This document shows, piece after piece, positions 5,150 through 42,452 of a stretch of 47,164 nt of DNA (position 1 is its first letter; each line of letters starts with the position of its first letter). Below the pieces are notes generated by a model that worked only from the letters and a program-made list of their open reading frames with translations, had not been told where the DNA came from and ran no database searches. Position numbers and translations under genes: made by a program. Location: contig NW_027361688.1 in NCBI RefSeq assembly GCF_039654945.1, positions 930,001-977,164 on the forward strand, in the 5' to 3' direction. This DNA is from Dendrobates tinctorius (lineage: Eukaryota).

Positions 5150-7900
5150 GGCTTTGCCGGGGGGGCCGTTATACTATATGGAGGGCTATGTGGGGGTCTT
5201 TGTACATTATGGTAGGATATGTGGGGACCATTATATTGTTTGAAGGGCTGTATGGGGCCATTATACTGTATGGAGAACTATGTGGGGACATTATACTATA
5301 TGGAGGACTATGTGGGGGTCATTATACTGTATGGAGGACTATGTGGGGCCCATTATACTATATGGAGGACTATGTGGGGGTCATTATACTGTATGGAGGA
5401 CTACGTGGCGCCCATTATACTATATGGAGGGCTACGTGGGGACATTATACTATATGGAGGACTATGTGGGGGCCATTATACAGTATGGAGGACTATGTGG
5501 GGGCCATTATACTATATGGAGGGCTATGTGGGACATTATACTATATGGAGGGCTATGTGGGGACCATTACACTGTATTGAGGACTATGTGTCAGCCATTA
5601 TACTATATGGAGGGCTATGTGGGGGGCAATATACTGTTTGGAGGGCTATGTGGGGGCCATTATACTGTTTGGAGGGCTATGTGGGGGCCATTATACTATA
5701 TAGAGGGCTATGTGGGGGTCATTATACTATATGGAGGGCTATGTGATGGCCATTATACTATATAGAGGGCCATGTGGGGCCATTATACTATATAGAGGGT
5801 TATGTGGGGGCCATTATACTATATGGAGGGCTATGTGGGGCCATTATATTGTTTGGAGGACTATGTGGGGGACATTATACTGTTTGGAGGGCTATGTGGG
5901 GGCCATTATACTATATGGAGGGCTATGTGGGGCCCATTATACTATATGGAGGGCTACGTGGGGACATTATACTATATGGAGGACTATGTGGGGGCCATTA
6001 TACAGTATGGAGGACTATGTGGGGGCCATTATACTATATGGAGGGCTATGTGGGACATTATACTATATGGAGGGCTATGTGGGGACCATTACACTGTATT
6101 GAGGACTATGTGTCAGCCATTATACTATATGGAGGGCTATGTGGGGGGCAATATACTGTTTGGAGGGCTATGTGGGGGACATTATACTGTTTGGAGGGCT
6201 ATGTGGGGGCCATTATACTATATAGAGGGCTATGTGGGGGTCATTATACTATATGGAGGGCTATGTGATGGCCATTATACTATATAGAGGGCCATGTGGG
6301 GCCATTATACTATATGGAGGGTTATGTGGGGGCCATTATACTATATGGAGGGCTATGTGGGGCCATTATATTGTTTGGAGGACTATGTGGGGGACATTAT
6401 ACTGTTTGGAGGGCTATGTGGGGGCCATTATACTATATGGAGGGCTATGTGGGGCCCATTATACTATATGGAGGGCTACGTGGGGACATTATACTATATG
6501 GAGGACTATGTGGGAGCCATTATACAGTATGGAGGACTATGTGGGGGCCATTATACTATATGGAGGGCTATGTGGGACATTATACTATATGGAGGGCTAT
6601 GTGGGGACCATTACACTGTATTGAGGACTATGTGTCAGCCATTATACTATATGGAGGGCTATGTGGGGGGCAATATACTGTTTGGAGGGCTATGTGGGGG
6701 ACATTATACTGTTTGGAGGGCTATGTGGGGGCCTTTATACTATATAGAGGGCTATGTGGGGGTCATTATACTATATGGAGGGCTATGTGATGGCCATTAT
6801 ACTATATAGAGGGCCATGTGGGGCCATTATACTATATGGAGGGTTATGTGGGGGCCATTATACTATATGGAGGGCTATGTGGGGCCATTATATTGTTTGG
6901 AGGACTATGTGGGGGACATTATACTGTTTGGAGGGCTATGTGGGGGCCATTATACTATATGGAGGGCTATGTGGTGGCCATTATACTATATAGAGGGCTA
7001 TGTGGGGCCATTATACTATATGGAGGGCTACGTGGGGGGCAATATACTGTTTGGAGGGCTATGCGGGGGACATTATACTATATGGATGGCTATGTGGGGG
7101 CCATTACACTGTATGGAGGACTATGTGTCAGCCATTATACTATATGGAGGGCTACGTGGGGGGCAATATACTGTTTGGAGGGCTATGCGGGGGACATTAT
7201 ACTATATGGATGGCTATGTGGGGGCCATTACACTGTATGGAGGACTATGTGTCAGCCATTATACTATATGGAGGGCTACGTGGGGGGCAATATACTGTTT
7301 GGAGGGCTATGTGGGGGACATTATACTGTTTGGAGGGCTATGTGGCACCATTATACTATATGGAGGGTTATGTGGGGGCCATTATACTATATGGAGGGCT
7401 ATGTGGGGCCATTATACTGTATGGAGGGCTCTGTGGGGCCATTATACTGTATGGAGGGCTATGTGGGGCCATTATACTGTATGGAGGGCTATGTGGGGCC
7501 ATTATACTATATGGAGGGCTTTGTGGGGGCCATTATACTGTATGGAGGGCTATGTGGGGGCCATTATACTGTATGGAGGGCTATGTGGGGCCATTATACT
7601 GTATGGAGGGCTATGTGGGGCCATTATATTATATGGAGGGTTATGTGGGGGCCATTATACTATATGGAGGGCTATGTGGGGCCATTATATTGTTTGGAGG
7701 ACTATGTGGGGGACATTATACTGTACATAAGCAATTATACAGTCTGAAAGGTTTTCTGGGGTCCATAGTACTCTGTAGGGGGCTGTATGTGGGTCAGTAT
7801 GATGTTTTGAGGGCTGGGTGGGGGCCATTATATTATTTGGAGGGCTAGTTGGGGCCACTATACAGTGTGGATGTTGTATTGGGGCCATCATACAGGGTAG
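5150..7900. repeat. G-rich minisatellite, 30-31-bp unit GGGGCCATTATACTATATGGAGGGCTATGT, with higher-order repeats
   Basis: About 85 units; variant pattern recurs every 522 bp and later every 124 bp; decays beyond 7730. Confidence 0.95.
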
Positions 7901-8574
7901 GGGTATGGAGGCCATTATACTGCATGGCGGGCTGTGTGGGGATCACAGTTGGGGCATTATATTATGTTGGGGTCACCATACCTTGCCGGTGGAGTGTGGA
8001 GGGTCAGGAGGGGGGGTACAGTAGGGTCATCATACCGTGTGTCGGGTGCTGTAGAAGAATTCACTGTGGGGGTATCAAACTGTGTTTCAGGGGGACACTA
8101 AAGTTGGCATCATACTTTATGGGGGGTAATGAAGGGGGCTCCAATAGGGGGGAAATTACTTTGTAATAGCTGCCAAGTTGTGAGACATGCTCCTCTGTGA
8201 CCCCGCCGGATATTATGTTTTCTTTGGGGGTGGGGGGAAGCCCCATGCTTAATCTGCACACCCCTGGCACCGGGTGTAAGGGGGAGGAGCATGATACTGA
8301 GCCATGCCCCGCCCCCTGCTACGAGGTTTTCTCAGGGAAATTCCTCAATGTCCCAATCCGAGAGCTGGAGTCTCCGCCATCATCTCACTCCATTGCTCGT
8401 CTCTGATGATCCGTCACCGTCTGACTCATCCGCATAATTGCGGCTCATGGAAATTATTCCAGGAAGAGAAACGACTGATTACATGATCAACTCTGAGATC
8501 ACCGACCACAAAGCCGATGACATCACAGCGAGACCCAAATTACTGTCACCGCCCCCACCGAAAATACTCTGTGC

Positions 8575-11500
8575 TACAGGATAATGAGCGCAGCTCTGGG
8601 GTAGAATACCGCATGTAACTCAGGATCAGTAATGTAATGTATGTACACAGTGACTGCACCAGCAGAATAGTGAGTGCAGCTCTGGAGTATAATACAGGAG
8701 GTAACTCAGGAACAGTAATGTAATGTATGTACACAGTGACTGCACCAGCAGAATAGTGAGCGCAGCTCTGGAGTATAATACAGGATGTAACTCAGGATCA
8801 GTAATGTAATGTATGTACACAGTGACTGCACCAGCAGAATAGTGAGTGCAGCTCTGGGGTATAATACAGGATGTAACTCAGGATCAGTAATGTAATGTAT
8901 GTACACAGTGACTGCACCAGCAGAATAGTGAGTGCTGCTCTGGAGTATAATACAGGATGTAACTCAGGATCAGTAATGTAATGTATGTACACAGTGACTG
9001 CACCAGCAGAATAGTGAGCGCAGCTCTGGAGTATAATACAGGATGTAACTCAGGATCAGTAATGTAATGTATGTACACAGTGACTGCACCAGCAGAATAG
9101 TGAGTGCAGCTCTGGGGTATAATACAGGATGTAACTCAGGATCAGTAATGTAATGTATGTACACAGTGACTGCACCAGCAGAATAGTGAGTGCCGCTCTG
9201 GAGTATAATACAGGAGGTAACTCAGGATCAGTAATGTAATGTATGTACACAGTGACTGCACCAGCAGAATAGTGAGTGCAGCTCTGGAGTATAATACAGG
9301 AGGTAACTCAGGATCAGTAATGTATGTACACAGTGACTGCACCAGCAGAATAGTGAGTGCAGCTATGGAGTATAATACAGGATGTAACTCAGGATCAGTA
9401 ATGTAATGTATGTACACAGTGACTGCACCAGCAGAATAGTGAGTGCAGCTCTGGAGTATAATACAGGATGTAACTCAGGATCAGTAATGTAATGTATGTA
9501 CACAGTGACTGCACCAGCAGAATAGTGAGTGCCGCTCTGGAGTATAATACAGGAGGTAACTCAGGATCAGTAATGTATGTGCACAGTGACTGCACCAGCA
9601 GAATAGTGAGTGCCGCTCTGGAGTATAATACAGGAGGTAACTCAGGATCAGTAATGTAATGTATGTACACAGTGACTGCACCAGCAGAATAGTGAGTGCA
9701 GCTCTGGGGTATAATACAGGATGTAACTCAGGATCAGTAATGTAATGTGTGTACACAGTGACTGCACCAGCAGAATAGTGAGTGCAGCTCTGGGGTATAA
9801 TACAGGATGTAACTCAGGATCAGTAATGTAATGTATGTACACAGTGACTGCACCAGCAGAATAGTGAGTGCCGCTCTGGAGTATAATACAGGAGGTAACT
9901 CAGGATCAGTAATGTAATGTATGTACACAGTGACTGCACCAGCAGAATAGTGAGTGCAGCTCTGGAGTATAATACAGGAGGTAACTCAGGATCAGTAATG
10001 TATGTACACAGTGACTGCACCAGCAGAATAGTGAGTGCAGCTATGGAGTATAATACAGGATGTAACTCAGGATCAGTAATGTAATGTATGTACACAGTGA
10101 CTGCACCAGCAGAATAATGAGTGCAGCTCTGGGGTATAATACAGGAGGTAACTCGGGATCAGTAATGTATGTACACAGTGACTGCACCAGCAGAATAGTG
10201 AGTGCAGCTCTGGAGTATAATACCGCATATAACTCAGGATCAGTAATGTAATGTATGTACACAGTGACTGCACCAACAGAATAGTGAGTGCAGCTCTGGG
10301 GTATAATACAGGATGTAACTCAGTATCAGTAATGTAATGTATGTGCACAGTATGTGCACAGTGACTGCACCAGCAGAATAGTGAGTGCAGCTCTGGAGTA
10401 TAACACAGGATGTAACCCAGGATCAGTAATGTATGTACACAGTGACTGCACCAGCAGAATAGTGAGTGCAGCTCTGGAGTATAATACAGGATGTAACTCA
10501 GTATCAGTAATGTAATGTATGTACACAGTGACTGCACCAGCAGAATAGTGAGTGCAGCTCTGGGGTATAATACAAGATGTAACCCAGGATCATTACTGTA
10601 ATGTATGTACACAGTGACTGCACCAGCAGAATAGTGAGTGCAGCTCTGGGGTATAATACAGGAAGTAAATCAGGATCAGTAATGTGTGTACACAGTGACT
10701 GCACCAGCAGAATAGTGAGTGCAGCTCTGGAGTATACCGCATATAACTCAGGATCAGTAATGTAATGTATGTACACAGTGACTGCACCAGCAGAATAGTG
10801 AGTGCAGCTCTGGGGTATAATACAGGATGTAACTCAGGATCAGTAATGTAATGTATGTACACAGTGCCTGCACCAGCAGAATAGTGAGTGCAGCTCTGGG
10901 GTATAATACAGGATGTAACTCAGGATCAGTAATGTATGTACACAGTCACTGCACCAGCAGAATAGTGAGTGCAGCTCTGGAGTATAATACAGGATGAACT
11001 CAGGATCAGTAATGTATGTACACAGTGACTGCACCAGCAGAATAGTGAGTGCAGCTCTGGAGTATAATACAGGATGTAACTCAGGATCAGTAATGTATGT
11101 ACACAGTGACTGCACCATCAGAATAGCGAGTGCAGCTCTGGAGTATAATACAGGAGGTAACTCAGGATCAGTAATGTACAGTATGTACACAGTGACTGCA
11201 CCAGCAGAATAGTGAGTGCAGCTCTGGGGTATAATACAGGATGTAACTCAGGATCAGTAATGTATGTACACAGTCACTGCACCAGCAGAATAGTGAGTGC
11301 AGCTCTGGAGTATAATACAGGATGAACTCAGGATCAGTAATGTATGTACACAGTGACTGCACCAGCAGAATAGTGAGTGCAGCTCTGGGGTATAATACAG
11401 GATGTAACTCAGGATCAGTAATGTATGTACACAGTGACTGCACCATCAGAATAGCGAGTGCAGCTCTGGAGTATAATACAGGATGTAACTCAGGATCAGT

Positions 11501-11806
11501 ATTGTATGTGCACAGTGACTGCACCAGCAGAATAGTGAGTGCAGCTGTGGAGTATAATACAGGATGTAACTCAGGATCAGTAATGTATGTACTCAATCAC
11601 TGCATCAGCACAATAGTGAGTGCAGCTCTGGGGTATAATACAGGATGTAACTCAGGATCAGTAATGTATGTACACAGTCACTGCACCAGCAGAATAGTGA
11701 GTGCAGCTATGGGGTATAATGCAGGATGTAACTCAGGATCAGTAATGTAATGTATGTACACAGTGACTGCACCAGCAGAATAGTGAGTGCAGCTCTGGAG
11801 GATAAT
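8575..11806. repeat. 86-bp satellite array 1 (81-bp variants), intergenic
   Basis: Unit TCAGTAATGTAATGTATGTACACAGTGACTGCACCAGCAGAATAGTGAGTGCAGCTCTGGAGTATAATACAGGATGTAACTCAGGA, about 38 copies. Confidence 0.97.
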
Positions 11807-12940: not shown

Positions 12941-13917
12941 GTAAAGGAAAAAGTTTAGAATAGGAAAAAAATAATCACTTCCATAGATATTAGAGGGGAT
13001 TCGACTTTATAATTCACTTTTGTGTTTTTCAACCAGCATTAAAGGTTTGTGTTTGCTGTCAGTGAATGGAGCTTTCTTTTTTTGCTTCCACTGCCGGGGC
13101 ATGCTGGGAGTAGTAGTTTCACAAGAACTTAAGTGCTGCACATTGTCGACCTCTGGGCCCGCATAATGCTCCGAGCGTGAAAACAACTGGAACAAACCCT
13201 CATAAAATTACACGTTGCAGATCTGAACCCGATCAAATATTTTAATATATATATTGCTCTTTTTCTTTACTTTTTCATCCATTATTAGAAGCAGCCTCTT
13301 CCACCTGGAGGTCAGTAACGAATATTAGAAGGATGCCGGACCCCGACCGTGGAAAGAAATGAAGATTAAATTCTAACCGGACACCGTAGAATAAATAATC
13401 ATAAAATTAAAAATGTACAAATAAAAAAGTAACAGGGAAAAATCATGGTTTTCTCCACCGACCGGCAGCTGCCCCTTTAAAACAAAACACAGCCCCTACG
13501 ATCCCAATCATCCCTGGAATCCCGTCATGGAACGGTCGTCATCAGATCCCAGAGTGACGGTGATCGGCGGCAGAGTGCAGCTCTGGGGGTCTCATAATGC
13601 AAAAAAAAAAAATGGCAAGAAAAACAAAAAAGACCCCCGTGGTTAATTGCAGGGCCTGAGGCTCTTGATCCAGTACCCTCATAACATAATTTAAGCCCCT
13701 CCTTAGTTCCTAAATATAAAAAGGTGGGAAAGGAAGTCTCCGGGCGCGTGCTGCCATCATGCGAGAAATCCAGGGCCTGCAGGATCTCCTTGGCATTGGC
13801 GTCGCTCCTGCGCAGCTCCTGATGACCAACCGAGTCAGTCTGACAGATTCCCGAGAATCTTTTTTGTAATATTTTTTTCTCATTTTAAGCTCAAGTCAAA
13901 AAAGCAGCAGATGCATC

Positions 13918-20807
<6,890 letters not shown>

Positions 20808-22713: not shown

Positions 22714-25165
22714 ATACTATAATACTGCCCCCTATGTACAAGAATATAACTACTATAATACTGCTCCTATGTACAAGAATATAACTACTATAATACTGCT
22801 CCTATGTACAAGAATATAACTACTATAATACTGCCCCTATGTATAAGAATATAACTACTATAATACTGCCTCCTATGTACAAGAATATAACTACTATAAT
22901 ACTGCCACCAATGTACAAGAATATAACTACTATAATACTGCCCCTATGTACAAGAATATAACTACTATAATACTGCTCCTATGTACAAGAATATAACTAC
23001 TATAATACTGCCCCTATGTACAAGAATATAACTACTATAATACTGCCCCTATGTACAAGAATATAACTACTATAATACTGCCCCCATGTACAAGAATATA
23101 ACTACTATAATACTGCCCCTATGTACAAGAATATAACTACTATAATACTGCCCCTATGTACAAGAATATAACTACTATAATACTGCCCCCATGTACAAGA
23201 ATATAACTACTATAATACTGCCCCTATGTACAAGAATATAACTACTATAATACTGCTCCTATGTACAAGAATATAACTACTATAATACTGCCCCTATGTA
23301 CAAGAATATAACTACTATAATACTGCTCCTATGTACAAGAATATAACTACTATAATACTGCACCCTATGTACAAGAATATAACTACTATAATACTGCCCC
23401 CTATATACAAGAATATAACTACTATAATACTGCCCCTATATACAAGAATATAACTACTATAATACTGCCCCCTATGTACAAGAATATAACTACTATAATA
23501 CTGCTCCTATGTACAAGAATATAACTACTATAATACTGCTCCTATGTACAAGAATATAACTACTATAATACTGCCCCCATGTACAAGAATATAACTACTA
23601 TAATACTGCCCCTATGTACAAGAATATAACTACTATAATACTGCTCCTATGTACAAGAATATAACTACTATAATACTGCCCCCATGTACAAGAATATAAC
23701 TACTATAATACTGCCCCCATGTACAAGAATATAACTACTATAATACTGCCCCTATGTACAAGAATATAACTACTATAATACTGCTCCTATGTACAAGAAT
23801 ATAACTACTATAATACTGCCCCTATGTACAAGAATATAACTACTATAATACTGCTCCTATGTACAAGAATATAACTACTATAATACTGCCCCTATGTACA
23901 AGAATATAACCACTATAATACTGCTCCGATGTACAAGAATATAACTACTATAATACTGCACCCTATGTACAAGAATATAACTACTATAATACTGCCCCCT
24001 ATATACAAGAATATAACTACTATAATACTGCCCCCTATATACAAGAATATAACTACTATAATACTGCCCCTATATACAAGAATATAACTACTATAATACT
24101 GCCCCCTATGTACAAGAATATAACTACTATAATACTGCTCCTATGTACAAGAATATAACTACTATAATACTGCTCCTATGTACAAGAATATAACTACTAT
24201 AATACTGCTCCTATGTACAAGAATATAACTACTATAATACTGCCTCCTATGTACAAGAATATAACTACTATAATACTGCCCCCTATGTACAAGAATATAA
24301 CTACTATAATACTGCCCCCATGTACAAGAATATAACTACTATAATACTGGCCCCTATGTACAAGAATATAACTACTATAATACTGCCCCTATGTACAAGA
24401 ATATAACTACTATAATACTGCTCCTATGTACAAGAATATGACTACTATAATACTGCCCCTATATACAAGAATATAACTACTATAATACTGGCCCCTATGT
24501 ACAAGAATATAACTACTATAATACTACCCCCTATGTACAGGAATATAAATACTATAATACTGCCCCTATATACAAGAATATAACTACTATAATACTGCTC
24601 CCTATGTAGAAGAATATAACTACTATAATACTGCTCCTATGTACAAGAATATGACTACTATAATACTGCCCCTATATACAAGAATATAACTACTATAATA
24701 CTGGCCCCTATGTACAAGAATATAACTACTATAATACTACCCCCTATGTACAGGAATATAAATACTATAATGCTGCCCCTATGTACAAGAATATAACTAC
24801 TATAATACTGCCCCCTATGTACAAGAATATAACTACTATAATACTGCCTCCTATGTACAGGAATATAAATACTATAATACTGCCCCTATGTACAGGAATA
24901 TAAATACTATAATACTGCCCCTATATACAAGAATATAACTACTATAATACTGCTCCTATGTACAAGAATATAACTACTATAATACTGCCCCTATATACAA
25001 GAATATAACTACTATAATACTGCCCCTATGTACAAGAATATAACTACTATAATACTGCCCCCTATATACAAGAATATAACTACTATAATACTGCCCCTAT
25101 GTACAAGAATATAACTACTATAATACTGCCCCCTATGTACAGGAATATAACTACTATAATACTGC
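22714..25165. repeat. 35-36-bp AT-rich minisatellite
   Basis: TACTATAATACTGCCCCTATGTACAAGAATATAAC x~69. Confidence 0.97.
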
Positions 25166-32835: not shown

Positions 32836-32917
32836 TAGGGGGGGGAACTTCCCCCTGATGATACAGCAAATGCAGCCAAAAAAAAAGCTGAAACCAAAGT
32901 GCGATCACACTACTCTT

Positions 32918-35476
32918 CCTGTATAACACCCAGGTGCCACCACTACTCCTCCCGCCCTCCCGCATAATACCCAGGTGCCACCACTACTCCTCCCGTATAA
33001 TACCCAGGTGCCATCACTACTCCTCCCGCCCTCCCGTACAATACCCAGGTGCCACCACTACTCCTCCCGCCCTCCCGTACAATACCCAGGTGCCACCACT
33101 ACTCCTCCTGCCCTCCCGTACAATACCCAGGTGCCACCACTACTCCTCCCGCCCTCCCGTACAATACCCAGGTGCCACCACTACTCCTCCCGTATAATAC
33201 CCAGGTGCCATCACTACTCCTCCCGCCCTCCCGTATAATACCCAGGTGCCACTACTCGCGCCCTCCCGTATAATACCCAGGTGACACCGCTTTTTCCTCC
33301 CGTATAATACCCATGTGCCACCACTACTCCTCCCGCCCTCCCGTATAATACCCAGGTGCCACCACTACTTGCGCCCTCCCGTACAATACCCAGGTGCCAC
33401 CACTACTCCTCCTGCCCTCCCGTACAATACCCAGGTGCCACCACTACTCCTCCTGCCCTCCCGTACAATACCCAGGTGCCACCACTACTCCTCCTGCCCT
33501 CCCGTACAATACCCAGGTGCCACCACTACTCCTCCTGCCCTCCCGTACAATACCCAGGTGCCACCACTACTCCTCCTGCCCTCCCGTACAATACCCAGGT
33601 GCCACCACTACTCCTCCTGCCCTCCCGTACAATACCCAGGTGCCACCACTACTCCTCCTGCCCTCCCGTACAATACCCAGGTGCCACCACTACTCCTCCT
33701 GCCCTCCCGTACAATACCCAGGTGCCACCACTACTCCTCCTGCCCTCCCGTACAATACCCAGGTGCCACCACTACTCCTCCTGCCCTCCCGTACAATACC
33801 CAGGTGCCACCACTACTCCTCCTGCCCTCCCGTACAATACCCAGGTGCCACCACTACTCCTCCTGCCCTCCCGTACAATACCCAGGTGCCACCACTACTC
33901 CTCCTGCCCTCCCGTACAATACCCAGGTGCCACCACTACTCCTCCTGCCCTCCCGTACAATACCCAGGTGCCACCACTACTCCTCCTGCCCTCCCGTACA
34001 ATACCCAGGTGCCACCACTACTCCTCCTGCCCTCCCGTACAATACCCAGGTGCCACCACTACTCCTCCTGCCCTCCCGTACAATACCCAGGTGCCACCAC
34101 TACTCGCGCCCTCCCGTACAATACCCAGGTGCCACCACTACTCGCGCCCTCCCGTACAATACCCAGGTGCCACCACTACTCGCGCCCTCCCGTACAATAC
34201 CCAGGTGCCACCACTACTCGCGCCCTCCCGTACAATACCCAGGTGCCACCACTACTCGCGCCCTCCCGTACAATACCCAGGTGCCACCACTACTCGCGCC
34301 CTCCCGTACAATACCCAGGTGCCACCACTACTCGCGCCCTCCCGTATAATACCCAGGTGCCACCACTACTCCTCCCGTATAATACCCAGGTGCCATCACT
34401 ACTCCTCCCGCCCTCCCGTATAATACCCAGGTGCCACCACTGTTACTCCTGCCCTCCTGTATAACACAGGTGCCACCACTACTCCTCCCGCATAATAACC
34501 AGGTGCCACCACTACTCGCGCATAATACCCAGGTGCCATCACTACTCCTCCCGCCCTCCCGTACAACACCCAGGTGCCACCACTACTTGCGCCCTCGCGT
34601 ATAATACCCAGGTGCCATCACTACTCCTCCCGCCCTCCCGTATAATACCCAGGTGCCACCACTACTCCTCCCGCATAATACCCAGGTGCCACCACTACTC
34701 CTCCCGTATAATACCCAGGTGCCACCACTACTCCTCCCGCCCTCCCGTACAATACCCAGGTGCCACCACTACTCCTGCTGCCCTCCCGTACAATACCCAG
34801 GTGCCACCACTACTCCTCCCGCATAATACCCAGGTGCCACCACTACTCCTCCCGCACAATACCCAGGTGCCACCACTACTCCTCCCGCACAATACCCAGG
34901 TGCCACCACTACTCCTCCCGCACAATACCCAGGTGCCACCACTACTCCTCCCGCACAATACCCAGGTGCCACCACTGCTCCTCCCGCCCTCCCGTACAAT
35001 ACCCAGGTGCCACCACTACTCCTGCCGCCCTCCCGTACAATACCCAGGTGCCACCACTACTCCTCCCGTACAATACCCAGGTGCCACCACTACTCCTGCC
35101 GCCCTCCCGTACAATACCCAGGTGCCACCACTACTCCTCCCGTATAATACCCAGGTGCCACCACTACTCCTCCCGCACAATACCCAGGTGCCACCACTGC
35201 TCCTCCCGCCCTCCCGTACAATACCCAGGTGCCACCACTACTCCTGCCGCCCTCCCGTACAATACCCAGGTGCCACCACTACTCCTCCCGTACAATACCC
35301 AGGTGCCACCACTACTCCTGCCGCCCTCCCGTACAATACCCAGGTGCCACCACTACTCCTCCCGTATAATACCCAGGTGCCACCACTACTCCTCCCGCAC
35401 AATACCCAGGTGCCACCACTGCTCCTCCCGCCCTCCCGTACAATACCCAGGTGCCACCACTACTCCTCCCGCCCTC
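32918..35476. repeat. C-rich minisatellite with 41/38/33-bp unit variants
   Basis: CCAGGTGCCACCACTACTCCTCCTGCCCTCCCGTACAATAC, about 65-70 copies in homogeneous blocks. Confidence 0.97.
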
Positions 35477-38861: not shown

Positions 38862-41800
38862 CTAAAGGAAAAAGCGACAAAACAGCCTGATAATCCGGCA
38901 CCTTGTCCCCGATCTCCTGGACCCTCCGCCGGGGCCCGCAGAGCGTCTCACCTGTAGGGCCGCCGTAGACTCCTCGCTGGGTAAAGACTCGATCAGAACG
39001 TCGATATCTTTTGCGGTGCGAGCGATGAGGGCGGCGAAGAGCTGAGCATATTCTGCAAGACAGAAGAGAGGAGGATACAACATGTCTGCTGGGAGGAGGA
39101 GGACGGCGAGGACGGGTGAAACTCACCTTCCGTGGGGCTGGAGGGCTGCTCCTTATTTACAGACGTCTGGATGTTACTGAACGAGGCGGGAGGAGCGCAC
39201 TGCTGCAGCACCCCGATGGCGTTACAGAACTGGTCCGCAAGCTGCAAAACACGGCAGAAGAGTGAGCGCAGCTCTGGGGTATAACACAGGATGTAACTCA
39301 GGATCAGTAATGTAATGTATGTACACAGTGACTGCACCAGCAGAATAGTAAGTGCAGCTCTGGGGTATAATACAGGAGGAAACTCAGGATCAGTAATGTA
39401 ATGTATGTGCACAGTGACTGCACCAGCAGAATAGTGAGTGCAGCTCTGGAGTATAATACAGGATGTAACTCAGGATCAGTAATGTAATGTATGTGCACAG
39501 TGACTGCACCAGCAGAATAGTGAGTGCAGCTCTGGGGTATAATACAGGAGGTAACTCAGGATCAGTAATGTAATGTATGTACACAGTGACTGCACCAGCA
39601 GAATAGTGAGTGCAGCTCTGGGGTATAATACAGGAGGTAATTCAGGATCAGTAATGTATGTACACAGTGACTGCACCAGCAGAATAGTAAGTGCAGCTCT
39701 GGGGTATAATACAGGAGGAAACTCAGGATCAGTAATGTAATATATGTACACAGTGACTGCACCAGCAGAATAGTGAGTGCAGCTCTGGAGTATAATACAG
39801 GAGGTAACTCAGGATCAGTAATGTAATGTATGTACACAGTGACTGCACCAGCAGAATAGTGAGTGCAGCTCTGGGGTATAATACAGGAGGTAATTCAGGA
39901 TCAGTAATGTAATGTATGTACACAGTGACTGCACCAGCAGAATAGTAAGTGCAGCTCTGGGGTATAATACAGGATGTAACTCAGGATCAGTAATGTAATG
40001 TATGTACACAGTGACTGCACCAGCAGAATAGTGAGTGCAGCTCTGGAGTATAATACAGGATGTAACTCAGGATCAGTAATGTATGTACACAGTGACTGCA
40101 CCAGCAGAATAGTGAGTGCAGCTCTGGGGTATAACACAGGAGGTAACTCAGGATCAGTAATGTAATGTATGTACACAGTGACTGCACCAGCAGAATAGTG
40201 AGTGCAGCTCTGGAGTATAATACAGGATGTAACTCAGGATCAGTTATGTAATGTATGTGCACAGTGACTGCACCAGCAGAATAGTGAGTGCAGCTCTGGG
40301 GTATAATACAGGAGGTAACTCAGGATCAGTAATGTAATGTATGTACACAGTGACTGCACCAGCAGAATAGTGAGTGCAGCTCTGGGGTATAATACAGGAG
40401 GTAATTCAGGATCAGTAATGTAATGTATGTACACAGTGACTGCACCAGCAGAATAGTAAGTGCAGCTCTGGGGTATAATACAGGAGGAAACTCAGGATCA
40501 GTAATGTAATATATGTACACAGTGACTGCACCAGCAGAATAGTGAGTGCAGCTCTGGAGTATAATACAGGAGGTAACTCAGGATCAGTAATGTAATGTAT
40601 GTACACAGTGACTGCACCAGCAGAATAGTGAGTGCAGCTCTGGGGTATAATACAGGAGGTAATTCAGGATCAGTAATGTAATGTATGTACACAGTGACTG
40701 CACCAGCAGAATAGTAAGTGCAGCTCTGGGGTATAATACAGGATGTAACTCAGGATCAGTAATGTAATGTATGTACACAGTGACTGCCCCAGCAGAATAG
40801 TGAGTGCAGCTCTGGAGTATAATACAGGATGTAACTCAGGATCAGTAATGTATGTACACAGTGACTGCACCAGCAGAATAGTGAGTGCAGCTCTGGGGTA
40901 TAACACAGGAGGTAACTCAGGATCAGTAATGTAATGTATGTACACAGTGACTGCACCAGCAGAATAGTGAGTGCAGCTCTGGAGTATAATACAGGATGTA
41001 ACTCAGGATCAGTTATGTAATGTATGTACACAGTGACTGCACCAGCAGAATACTGAGTGCAGCTCTGGAGTATAATACAGGATGTAACTCAGGATCAGTA
41101 ATGTAATGTACGTACACAGTGACTGCACCAGCAGAATAGTGAGTGCAGCTCTGGGGTATAATACAGGATGTAACTCAGGGTCAGTAATGTAATGTATGTA
41201 CACAGTGACTGCACCAGCAGAATAGTGAGTGCAGCTCTGGAGTATAATACAGGAGGTAACTCAGGATCAGTAATGTATGTACACAGTGACTGCACCAGCA
41301 GAATAGTGAGTGCAGCTCTGGAGTATAATACAGGATGTAACTCAGGGTCAGTAATGTAATGTATGTACACAGTGACTGCACCAGCAGAATAGTGAGTGCA
41401 GCTCTGGAGTATAATACAGGAGGTAACTCAGGATCAGTAATGTAATGTATGTACACAGTGACTGCACCAGCAGAATAGTGAGTGCAGCTCTGGAGTATAA
41501 TACAGGATGTAACTCAGGATCAGTAATGTATGTACACAGTGACTGCACCAGCAGAATAGTGAGTGCAGCTCTGGAGTATAATACAGGATGTAACTCAGGA
41601 TCAGTAATGTAATTTATGTACACAGTGACTGCACCAGCAGAATAGTGAGTGCAGCTCTGGGGTATAATACAGGATGTAACTCAGGGTCAGTAATGTAATG
41701 TATGTACACAGTGACTGCACCAGCAGAATAGTGAGTGCAGCTCTGGAATATAATACAGGAGGTAACTCAGGATCAGTAATGTAATGTATGTACACAGTGA

Positions 41801-42452
41801 CTGCACCAGCAGAATAGTGAGTGCAGCTCTGGGGTATAATACAGGATGTAACTCAGGGTCAGTAATGTAATGTATGTACACAGTGACTGCACCAGCAGAA
41901 TAGTGAGTGCAGCTCTGGGGTATAATACAGGATGTAACTCAGGATCAGTAATGTATGTACACAGTGACTGCACCAGCAGAATAGTGAGTGCAGCTCTGGA
42001 GTATAATACAGGATGTAACTCAGGATCAGTAATGTAATTTATGTACACAGTGACTGCACCAGCAGAATAGTGAGTGCAGCTCTGGGGTATAATACAGGAT
42101 GTAACTCAGGGTCAGTAATGTAATGTATGTACACAGTGACTGCACCAGCAGAATAGTGAGTGCAGCTCTGGGGTATAATACAGGATGTAACTCAGGGTCA
42201 GTAATGTATGTACACAGTGACTGCACCAGCAGAATAGTGAGTGCAGCTCTGGAGCAGACATCACACACAGATGATACTGGTGGTCGTGCACTATCATGCA
42301 GTCACGAGGGTGTTTACATACAATCTTTCTCGCTATATCGCGGTCTCCTCGGATATACACCGCACAGCGGACGGAGCACGAGCCTCGGGCGGACACCGTG
42401 AGTCACTTACCGAGTTGAGCGCGTCCTGCAGCTGCGTCAGGCGATCCGCCAT
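38685..42452 (-). CDS. MED21: Mediator complex subunit 21, full spliced CDS span, 4 exons, 435 nt, 144 aa
   Basis: [14 protein letters not shown]|[38 protein letters not shown]|[34 protein letters not shown]|[58 protein letters not shown]; all introns GT-AG. Confidence 0.97.
38952..39052 (-). CDS. MED21: MED21 exon 3
   Basis: 101 nt, [34 protein letters not shown]; CAG/GTGAGA. Confidence 0.95.
39127..39241 (-). CDS. MED21: MED21 exon 2
   Basis: 115 nt, [10 protein letters not shown]...PSSPTE; CAG/GTGAGT. Confidence 0.95.
39254..42254. repeat. 86-bp satellite array 3, MED21 intron 1
   Basis: Same unit and orientation as arrays 1 and 2, about 35 copies, ~95% of the 3169-nt intron. Confidence 0.97.
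42411..42452 (-). CDS. MED21: MED21 exon 1 coding part
   Basis: ATG at 42452 in AAGATGGCG context; [14 protein letters not shown]; GTAAGT donor. Confidence 0.95.

What the first reader, a model, noticed from the sequence alone, without database searches (positions are those of the whole stretch)
39242..39290. 86-bp satellite appears to supply the branch point and 3' splice site of MED21 exon 2
Seen: on the transcribed strand each unit reads GCACTCAC-TATTCTGCTGG-TGCAG, a yTnAy branch-like motif followed by CAG. The last unit reads GCGCTCAC-TCTTCTGCCGTGTTT-TGCAG|exon 2, so the real acceptor looks like a pyrimidine-improved version of the unit, with the branch A at -22. About 35 weaker copies lie upstream. 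Inference: either the satellite was exapted as a splice signal or it expanded from a 3'-splice-site-like seed. Either way the spliceosome must skip dozens of near-cognate sites.
Basis: partly seen in the sequence, partly recalled or inferred. Interest (0 to 1): 0.72.

Follow-up and report, generated by a model that had tools for sequence, protein, structure and literature searches.

The report
Satellite repeat supplies MED21 branch point
In poison frogs a 3-kb tandem repeat sits 12 bases before a conserved MED21 exon, so its last copy almost certainly supplies the intron's branch point, while the splice site itself is older frog sequence; this is a tidy but fairly ordinary case of a repeat taking over a splicing signal.

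Summary
MED21 runs on the minus strand. Intron 1 (42410-39242, 3169 nt) is 95% one 86-bp array of 36 copies, all sense to the gene. The array ends 12 nt before the exon-2 AG. The last copy puts CTCAC with its A at -22, the only adenosine in the AG-free zone. The 35 upstream copies carry CT[C/T]AC-15 nt-CAG.

- **Branch point:** by geometry, the branch point and the distal pyrimidine tract are satellite DNA.
- **Splice site:** the AG and the T-run are probably ancestral. Bufo, Pristimantis and Gastrophryne have TGCAG at this acceptor without a sense array there. The two flanks of the dendrobatid array join into a 3' end collinear with that of Engystomops.
- **Age:** both array junctions are shared with Ranitomeya variabilis and R. 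imitator (27 and 52 copies), whose NCBI gene models use this acceptor.
- **Origin:** the satellite did not grow from this site. It is a MITE-like family also found in other frog families, in either orientation.
- **Chance:** a branch-like motif plus CAG occurs in 70% of shuffled units.

The scan noted the same satellite at an STK38L acceptor in this window. It also noted other repeat-at-acceptor cases in this genome (GLYR1, COPS3, TOM1L2, FBXO3). No branch point has been mapped.

The parts
42411..42452 (-). MED21 exon 1 coding part ([14 protein letters not shown]), followed by the donor GTAAGT
   Evidence: Read directly. Identical to the N-terminus of the frog MED21 proteins P0006 and P0071.
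42253..42410 (-). 158-nt non-array 5' part of intron 1. Roughly 42322-42271 looks like a decayed antisense copy of the same satellite. The end (...TGTGTGTGATGTCTGCT) is the upstream half of the ancestral 3' intron end.
   Evidence: The match to an antisense unit is weak: score 24 against shuffles of 14.1 +/- 2.3, shuffle maximum 27. Collinearity with Engystomops is shown.
39254..42252 (-). 86-bp (some 81-bp) satellite array, 35.3 copies, sense to MED21, making up 95% of intron 1
   Evidence: Tandem Repeats Finder. 36 anchors, all on the minus strand. Both junctions are shared with R. variabilis and R. imitator.
39253..39277 (-). Last, partial satellite copy (CCAGAGCTGCGCTCACTCTTCTGCC). It differs from the consensus by A>G at -26 and A>C at -20.
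   Evidence: The A>C change occurs in 1 of 83 copies in the window and in 1 of 24 in R. variabilis, at the orthologous copy.
39262..39266 (-). Predicted branch-point motif CTCAC, with the branch A at 39263 (-22)
   Evidence: It is the only A between the upstream AGAG and the 3' AG. It matches yUnAy and lies within the 19-37 nt range of mapped branch points. It has not been mapped experimentally.
39244..39262 (-). Pyrimidine tract, 15 of 19 pyrimidines. The distal part (CTCTTCTGC) is satellite. The proximal part (GTGTTTTGC) is probably ancestral.
39242..39253 (-). Last 12 nt of the intron (CGTGTTTTGCAG), with the acceptor AG at 39243-39242. This is probably the ancestral 3' end and not satellite.
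   Evidence: Outgroup acceptors end in ...CTGCAG...TTGCAG or ...GGCAG. Alignment of the array-excised flanks supports this. The first base of this tail (-12) differs among the three dendrobatids (C, G, T), and R. imitator also differs in the satellite bases just upstream, while TGTTTTGCAG is fixed.
39127..39241 (-). MED21 exon 2 (115 nt), followed by the strong donor AAG|GTGAGT
39332..39352 (-). Nearest decoy module (CTTAC-15 nt-CAG). Using it would lengthen exon 2 by 90 nt, which is 30 codons in frame with no stop.
   Evidence: The open frame is shown.
17397..17434 (-). Second case in the window. The last copy of the same satellite lies before the acceptor of the STK38L exon that starts at 17396. 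CTCAC has its A at 17420 (-24) and the array ends at -14.

Best explanation
An array of an old, MITE-like 86-bp frog satellite, oriented sense to MED21, came to lie about 12-13 nt upstream of the exon-2 acceptor. This happened in the common ancestor of Dendrobates and Ranitomeya.

The array split the ancestral 3' end of intron 1. The upstream part, which holds the former branch region, is now 2.3-4.5 kb away. The last ~12 nt, with the T-run and the AG, stayed in place.

The spliceosome must now use the last satellite copy for U2 binding. That copy offers CTCAC with its A at -22 and the tract TCTTCT. This part is inferred and has not been mapped.

The 35 upstream copies are weak decoys for three reasons:
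- Their A sits only 18 nt from their CAG.
- The tract between is short and broken by GG.
- The strand offers no 5' splice site to define a pseudo-exon.

The real site, by contrast, has a T4 run and is followed by a 115-nt exon with a consensus donor.
For: **Shown**
- The array is at 39254-42252 and the AG at 39243-39242.
- There is a single A in the AG-free zone, at -22.
- Both array junctions and the private A>C change of the last copy are shared by R. variabilis and R. imitator, with 27 and 52 copies.
- NCBI models for both Ranitomeya species join exon 1, and also alternative first exons, to this acceptor (P0006, P0003, P0002).
- Five outgroup frogs keep a YAG acceptor at the same codon. Three of them have TGCAG without a sense array at the site.
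- The array-excised dendrobatid flanks align collinearly with the 3' end of the Engystomops intron, with 0-5 of 500 shuffles reaching the observed score.
- The decoys have 10/15 pyrimidines against 15/19 for the real site.
- The best 5' splice site match on the sense strand is 5/9. The antisense strand has ATA|GTGAGT.

**From the literature**
- 90% of human branch points lie 19-37 nt upstream, 78% are A, and 77% of the stretches from branch point to splice site are AG-free (PMC4315302).
Against: - No lariat or RNA data exist for D. tinctorius. The Ranitomeya models are NCBI predictions.
- About a fifth of branch points are not A.
- The TG-rich flanks make the collinearity test soft. Z is only 1.3-2.4 against Pristimantis.
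- The unit's own GGTGCAG can be aligned to the terminal GGTG-TTTT-GCAG in R. variabilis with one 5-nt insertion. Satellite origin of the AG is therefore not excluded.
- The last copy is no better conserved between genera (35/36) than its neighbours (167/172), so there is no separate sign of selection on it.
- Private changes also mark the last copies of the other two arrays.
Confidence: 0.65

Rival explanations
1. The whole acceptor, including TGCAG, is the unit's own CTCAC...GGTGCAG, improved by a T-rich insertion. On this view the satellite supplies both the branch point and the 3' splice site.
For: The unit reads TTCTGCTGGTGCAG. R. variabilis reads TTCTGC-GGTG-TTTT-GCAG, which is one deletion and one 4-5-nt insertion away.
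Against: TGCAG or GGCAG stands at this acceptor in Bufo, Pristimantis, Gastrophryne and Engystomops with no sense copy adjacent. The last 12 nt align with those outgroup tails. CAG preceded by a G and a pyrimidine is common at acceptors anyway. An insertion landing exactly at the intron-exon border would also have had to replace the old AG base for base.
Confidence: 0.2
2. The fixed register is a selective filter. Array ends can erode or sit anywhere. In introns, only junctions that place CTCAC about 22-24 nt before an AG survive. The satellite would then act genome-wide as a portable branch-point cassette.
For: - Two intronic arrays in one window end at -13 and -14 with CTCAC at -22 and -24.
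- The STK38L intron keeps only 13 nt of non-satellite DNA at each splice site. That is too little for a simple insertion into a normal intron and suggests loss of unique DNA up to the splice signals.
Against: - The third array (8577-11806) ends in the same register about 5.3 kb past the STK38L stop, with no known exon behind it.
- Three arrays are too few to judge.
- In other frogs the family's ends fall in other registers and the antisense orientation is tolerated in the same intron.
Confidence: 0.25
3. The satellite arose here, by tandem duplication of a 3' splice-site-like seed in MED21 intron 1.
For: Locally born acceptor minisatellites do exist in this genome (GLYR1 and COPS3 notes; not checked here).
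Against: The same unit forms other arrays in this window. Related 95-100-bp units occur in Engystomops, Pristimantis and Bufo, with inverted-terminal, MITE-like forms.
Confidence: 0.02
4. The branch point is not in the satellite. Either a non-adenosine branch in the last 12 nt is used, or a distant branch upstream of the array.
For: Non-A branch points make up about 22% in human data. A note on FBXO3 in this genome proposes a far-distant branch (not checked).
Against: The last 12 nt are too close to the AG for a branch. Every satellite copy carries four AGs on this strand, so a branch upstream of the last copy would be followed by many earlier AGs.
Confidence: 0.08

Closest known systems
Branch points and pyrimidine tracts supplied by antisense Alu elements (Lev-Maor 2003; Mercer et al. 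2015, PMC4315302)
   Same: A repeat's own sequence serves as B-box and tract. 154 mapped branch points lie in exonized Alus, and a CUAAU motif sits in the Alu consensus.
   Different: In the Alu cases the repeat creates new, mostly alternative exons. Here a repeat appears to have taken over the branch point of an old, constitutive exon, and it is a tandem array with 35 copies of the same module upstream.
Human F7 intron 7: 37-bp minisatellite whose first unit spans the donor (Borensztajn et al. 2006, PMC1557585)
   Same: A tandem repeat abuts a real splice site, so near-identical pseudo-sites follow one another and stay silent. It is a natural model of splice-site choice.
   Different: F7 concerns 5' splice sites with identical copies, and the unit contains the real site. 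Here it is the 3' side, the copies are weaker than the real site, and the AG itself is probably outside the repeat.
Canine merle: SINE inserted at the PMEL intron 10/exon 11 border (PMC7349775)
   Same: A repeat wedged at an acceptor, with its pyrimidine-rich strand facing the exon, governs acceptor use.
   Different: Merle disturbs splicing and gives a phenotype. The frog array is fixed in three species and apparently harmless.
MITE-derived satellites such as Xstir of Xenopus laevis (Hikosaka & Kawahara 2004, listed in PMC6947457)
   Same: A frog tandem repeat whose unit is related to an element with terminal inverted repeats. Arms of 35 nt (86% complementary) occur in Engystomops and 27 nt (89%) in Bufo.
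   Different: No sequence comparison with Xstir was made. No target-site duplication or transposase partner was found.
Other repeat-at-acceptor cases noted in this genome (GLYR1, COPS3, TOM1L2, FBXO3)
   Same: Repeats or insertions directly in front of conserved exons, with the last copy used.
   Different: Those are locally born duplications or a retrotransposon. This one is a dispersed satellite family that recurs at a second gene.

Membership tests
MED21 (Mediator subunit 21, Pfam PF11221) | The exon-2 peptide matches MED21 proteins, with the exon 1/2 junction at ...ALNS|LADQF | tested here: met
   Exon 2 is 100% identical to Ranitomeya MED21 (P0003, P0006-P0008), and the hits carry PF11221. 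The junction is conserved in seven frogs.
U2-type 3' splice site | YAG preceded by a pyrimidine tract and an AG-free zone holding a yUnAy adenosine 19-37 nt upstream | tested here: met
   CAG at 39244-39242, 15/19 pyrimidines, CTCAC with its A at -22, and no other A back to the AGAG at -34 to -31. The range is from PMC4315302.
U2-type 3' splice site | The predicted adenosine is actually used for lariat formation | not testable with these tools
   No lariat or RNA reads were on hand. Only NCBI gene models of two sister species use the acceptor.
Repeat-derived (exapted) splice signal | The signal lies in sequence that is recognisably a copy of a dispersed repeat | tested here: met
   The 26 nt up to TTCTGC match the unit consensus at 24 positions. 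This holds for the branch motif and the distal tract only.
Repeat-derived (exapted) splice signal | The acceptor AG itself is repeat-derived | tested here: not met
   Outgroups have TGCAG or GGCAG here without the sense array. The last 12 nt align with their tails.
Repeat-derived (exapted) splice signal | The ancestral signal was displaced or lost | tested here: inconclusive
   The upstream half of the ancestral 3' end now lies 3 kb away. However, the ancestral branch point is itself only predicted.
Splice-site minisatellite of the F7 IVS7 kind | The repeat unit contains the authentic splice site, so the copies are identical pseudo-sites | tested here: not met
   By Tandem Repeats Finder the array ends at -13. 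The real module differs from the copies in spacer length (19 against 15 nt) and in four or more bases.
MITE-derived satellite | Terminal inverted repeats bounding a short element related to the unit | tested here: met
   Arms of 35 nt (86% complementary, Engystomops) and 27 nt (89%, Bufo). None bound the D. tinctorius arrays.
MITE-derived satellite | Target-site duplication and a related autonomous transposon | tested here: inconclusive
   No clear duplication was seen at the ends inspected. No transposon search was made.

The most novel reading that the evidence does not exclude
In dendrobatid genomes this satellite may work as a portable branch-point and pyrimidine-tract cassette. Because its TIR-like end carries CTCAC-TATTCTGC, arrays could spread or erode right up to about -13 of acceptors. 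They would do so in one register and on one strand, repeatedly replacing ancestral branch points of conserved exons, as seen at MED21 and STK38L in this window. Intron growth in giant frog genomes would then be shaped by which repeats can stand in for splice signals.
Probability: 0.2. Interest if true: 0.6.

Novelty: new member of a known kind. Interest (0 to 1): 0.38.

Why it matters
This is a clean natural experiment on 3' splice-site choice. Three species carry 27-52 near-identical branch-plus-CAG modules in a row, and gene models use only the last, slightly different one. The nearest decoy lies within exon-definition range and would add 30 in-frame codons to an essential Mediator subunit.

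It also shows how a very repeat-rich genome can lengthen an intron roughly tenfold, right up to the acceptor, without losing the exon. The mechanism, repeat-supplied splice signals, is already well known from Alu and SINE cases. The value here is as an example and test bed, not as a new principle.

Tried and rejected
1. **RNA folding.** I computed the partition function of the last 6.5 copies plus exon 2. The AGs of the decoys and of the real site are all predicted paired, and the branch motifs are equally accessible. Structure therefore gives no discrimination.
2. **Unit as an unusually splice-like sequence.** Rejected. 70% of shuffled units carry such a module.
3. **Extra conservation of the last copy.** Not seen. 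It is 35/36 identical between genera against 167/172 for its neighbours. Private substitutions also mark the end copies of the other arrays.
4. **Orientation bias.** All 88 copies in the window are sense to both genes. But they form only three arrays, and Engystomops and Pristimantis tolerate the antisense orientation in the same intron.
5. **D. tinctorius transcripts.** None turned up among the exon-2 hits. The species' protein differs from P0006 by one residue, so look-ups by identity could not find it. Following the operators' rule, I did not search or look up a joined exon model; exon 2 was searched by reference only.
6. **STK38L orthologues.** Not retrieved. No stop-free reference long enough to reach full-length kinases exists in the window.
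7. **Failed look-ups.** P0007 and P0081 were not on record.
8. **Mammalian or human-like hits.** Some hits look like mammalian or human MED21 (for example P0113 and P0117). I did not fetch, compare or search them further.
9. **Literature.** I found no description of this 86-bp satellite or of the MED21 site. The D. tinctorius genome paper does not mention satellites or tandem repeats.

Full report
**What is there**

The window carries MED21 and, downstream of it, STK38L, both on the minus strand. Earlier notes of the scan name the genome as the dyeing poison frog. The 100% identity of exon 2 to Ranitomeya MED21 fits that.

- MED21 exon 1 ends at 42411 (…AACTCG|GTAAGT).
- Exon 2 starts at 39241 (CTTGCGGACCAG = LADQ…).
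- Intron 1 is therefore 42410-39242, 3169 nt.
- Tandem Repeats Finder reports an 86-bp array at 39254-42252, 35.3 copies, 94% matches.
- A 16-mer anchor finds 36 copies in the intron, spaced 86 or 81 nt apart, all on the gene's strand.
- Only 158 nt at the 5' end and 12 nt at the 3' end of the intron lie outside the array.

Each copy reads GCACTCAC-TATTCTGCTGG-TGCAG. The last reads GCGCTCAC-TCTTCTGCCGTGTTT-TGCAG|exon 2, with the A of CTCAC at 39263, which is -22.

| Feature | Real site | 35 upstream copies |
|---|---|---|
| Branch A position | -22 | -18 relative to their own CAG |
| Spacer from A to AG | 19 nt | 15 nt |
| Pyrimidines in spacer | 15 | 10 |
| Longest runs | T4 and Y7 | no pyrimidine run above 4 |

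Between the upstream AGAG (-34 to -31) and the 3' AG there is exactly one adenosine, the -22 A. Five of the copies read CTTAC instead of CTCAC.

**Is it more than chance?**

The motif content is not. In 2000 dinucleotide-preserving shuffles of the pyrimidine-rich sense strand, 70% carry at least one yTnAy…YAG module. The mean is 1.17 per unit against 2 observed.

The geometry is what counts. In human data, 90% of mapped branch points lie 19-37 nt upstream of the AG, 78% are adenosine, and 77% of the stretches between branch and AG contain no other AG (PMC4315302). Here that whole zone is satellite DNA. The branch point of this constitutive exon is therefore very probably in the last copy. This is an inference; nothing has been mapped.

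**Comparative evidence**

I searched exon 2 by reference and fetched the MED21 loci of seven other frogs.

| Species | Intron 1 length | Satellite in intron 1 | Last bases before exon 2 |
|---|---|---|---|
| D. tinctorius (window) | 3169 nt | 36 sense copies | …GTGTTTTGCAG |
| Ranitomeya variabilis | 2345 nt | 27 sense copies | …GTGTTTTGCAG |
| R. imitator | 4503 nt | 52 sense copies | …GTGTTTTGCAG |
| Engystomops | 2015 nt | 18 antisense 100-bp units | …GTCTGGCAG |
| Pristimantis | 318 nt | about 2.3 antisense units | …GTGTCTGCAG |
| Bufo | 10645 nt | a few copies, both orientations, not near the acceptor | …TTTCCTGCAG |
| Gastrophryne | 9114 nt | none | …CTCTTTGCAG |
| Spea | 415 nt | none | …CTTTTTAG |

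- The two Ranitomeya species share both array junctions with D. tinctorius. They also share the private A>C change at -20 and the same CTCAC…TGTTTTGCAG. Only about -15 to -12 varies among the three.
- The array therefore predates the Dendrobates-Ranitomeya split.
- NCBI models of both Ranitomeya species join exon 1 to this acceptor. They also join an alternative donor (R. variabilis) and an upstream first exon (R. imitator) to it.
- The Engystomops antisense array ends 26 nt before the exon.

**What this does to the interpretation**

- TGCAG at this acceptor is older than the dendrobatid array, so it need not come from the unit.
- I cut the array out in a script and joined the two flanks. The result aligns collinearly with the last 40 nt of the Engystomops intron (z 3.1-5.5; 0-5 of 500 shuffles reach the score). 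The fit to Bufo is weaker and to Pristimantis weaker still.
- The simplest history is that a sense array came to lie at about -12/-13 inside an ancestral TG-rich 3' end. That placement separated the upstream part, including the GTATAAT/GTATTAT end of an old antisense copy that probably held the earlier branch region, from the AG.
- The idea that the satellite grew from a splice-site-like seed at this locus is excluded by the family's wide distribution. It is also excluded by the inverted-terminal, MITE-like forms: 35-nt arms at 86% in Engystomops and 27-nt arms at 89% in Bufo.
- Satellites derived from MITE-like elements are known in frogs, for example Xstir (PMC6947457).

**How the decoys are probably avoided (inferred)**

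- Their branch-to-AG spacing of 18 nt lies just below the usual range.
- Their tract is short and interrupted by GG next to the CAG.
- The sense strand has no 5' splice site match better than 5/9, so no pseudo-exon can be defined. The antisense strand would offer ATA|GTGAGT.
- The real site has the T4 run and a 115-nt exon ending in AAG|GTGAGT.
- Predicted RNA structure does not distinguish real from decoy.
- The nearest decoy would extend exon 2 by exactly 90 nt, 30 open codons. That product would escape nonsense-mediated decay and is worth looking for.

**Selection on the last copy is not shown**

The last copy is 35/36 identical between genera, and its neighbours are 167/172. The unique 5' flank is only 118/157 identical. 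The A>C at -20 is unique to the last copy (1 of 83 in the window, 1 of 24 in R. variabilis). However, the end copies of the other two arrays also carry private changes, as array edges usually do.

**The second case and the register**

The same satellite fills the STK38L intron 19194-17397 from +14 to -14, interrupted by a 781-nt insert. CTCAC has its A at 17420, which is -24.

A third array (8577-11806), about 5.3 kb past the STK38L stop, ends in the same register with no known exon behind it. Three of three ends in one register is unlikely by chance. It may mean that arrays of this family end with a whole TIR-like module. It may instead mean that only such junctions survive next to acceptors. 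One window cannot decide, and in other frogs the ends fall elsewhere.

**Comparison with known systems**

- Repeat-supplied branch points and tracts are established for antisense Alus.
- A minisatellite that multiplies a splice site is known at the F7 donor.
- A SINE at an acceptor underlies canine merle.
- The scan has noted other repeat-at-acceptor cases in this same genome: GLYR1, COPS3, TOM1L2 and FBXO3. I did not check these.

This finding is a new and rather neat member of that kind. It is old, fixed in three species and lies in an essential gene, but it is not a new principle.

**Limits**

- There are no RNA data for D. tinctorius.
- STK38L orthologues could not be fetched.
- I left untouched the hits that looked like mammalian or human MED21.

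Noticed in passing
window 17397-19194 (minus strand): One STK38L intron consists of the same satellite from +14 to -14. Arrays at 18770-19181 and 17410-17988 are split by a 781-nt insert ending in (TAA)n. Only 13 nt of unique DNA remain at each splice site, which suggests loss of the original intron sequence up to the splice signals.
   Followed up: partly
window 8574-8588 (minus strand): A third array (8577-11806), about 5.3 kb past the STK38L stop codon (13920-13918), ends in the same register (CTCATTATCCTGTAG) with no known exon behind it.
   Followed up: partly
window 39242-39333 (minus strand): Splicing to the nearest decoy CAG would add exactly 90 nt to exon 2. That is 30 codons in frame with no stop, so the product would not be removed by nonsense-mediated decay.
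   Followed up: partly
L001 about 7040-7060; window about 42275: R. variabilis isoform P0003 (MMVREQQ|LADQF) uses an alternative donor CAG|GTATTA that lies 24 nt before the array, in what looks like a decayed antisense copy. D. tinctorius has CAG-TATCAT there and so has no GT.
   Followed up: partly
L002 3091-3153: In Engystomops the antisense array ends 26 nt before the exon. Its terminal GTATAAT, with an A at about -28, is the likeliest branch region. The satellite may therefore serve the acceptor there too, from the other strand.
   Followed up: no
L003 (Bufo gargarizans), intron 1: NCBI isoform P0025 carries an extra 55-residue exon between exons 1 and 2, inside a 10.6-kb intron. It is probably an exonized repeat.
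   Followed up: no
window 39254-42252; L001 7081-9266; L007 6916-11271: Copy number differs (36, 27 and 52) while both junctions stay fixed. Orthologous copies near the acceptor are about 97% identical between genera, against 75-88% for unique intron DNA. This points to homogenisation or a slow-evolving family consensus.
   Followed up: partly
L002 1321-1435; L003 3388-3562: The family occurs as short elements with inverted ends: 35-nt arms at 86% and 27-nt arms at 89%. It looks MITE-derived. No target-site duplication was seen.
   Followed up: partly
window 1-47164: The window is packed with unrelated tandem arrays: 59 Tandem Repeats Finder rows with periods of 21, 29, 31, 35, 37, 41, 50 and 57 bp, among others. 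They include 2.5-kb arrays at 5161-7722, 22715-25165 and 32917-35476.
   Followed up: no
window 13571-13586 (minus strand): There is a lone fragment, CCAGAGCTGCACTCTG, matching the start of the satellite unit but followed by unrelated sequence. It is possibly a related element sharing the terminal module.
   Followed up: no
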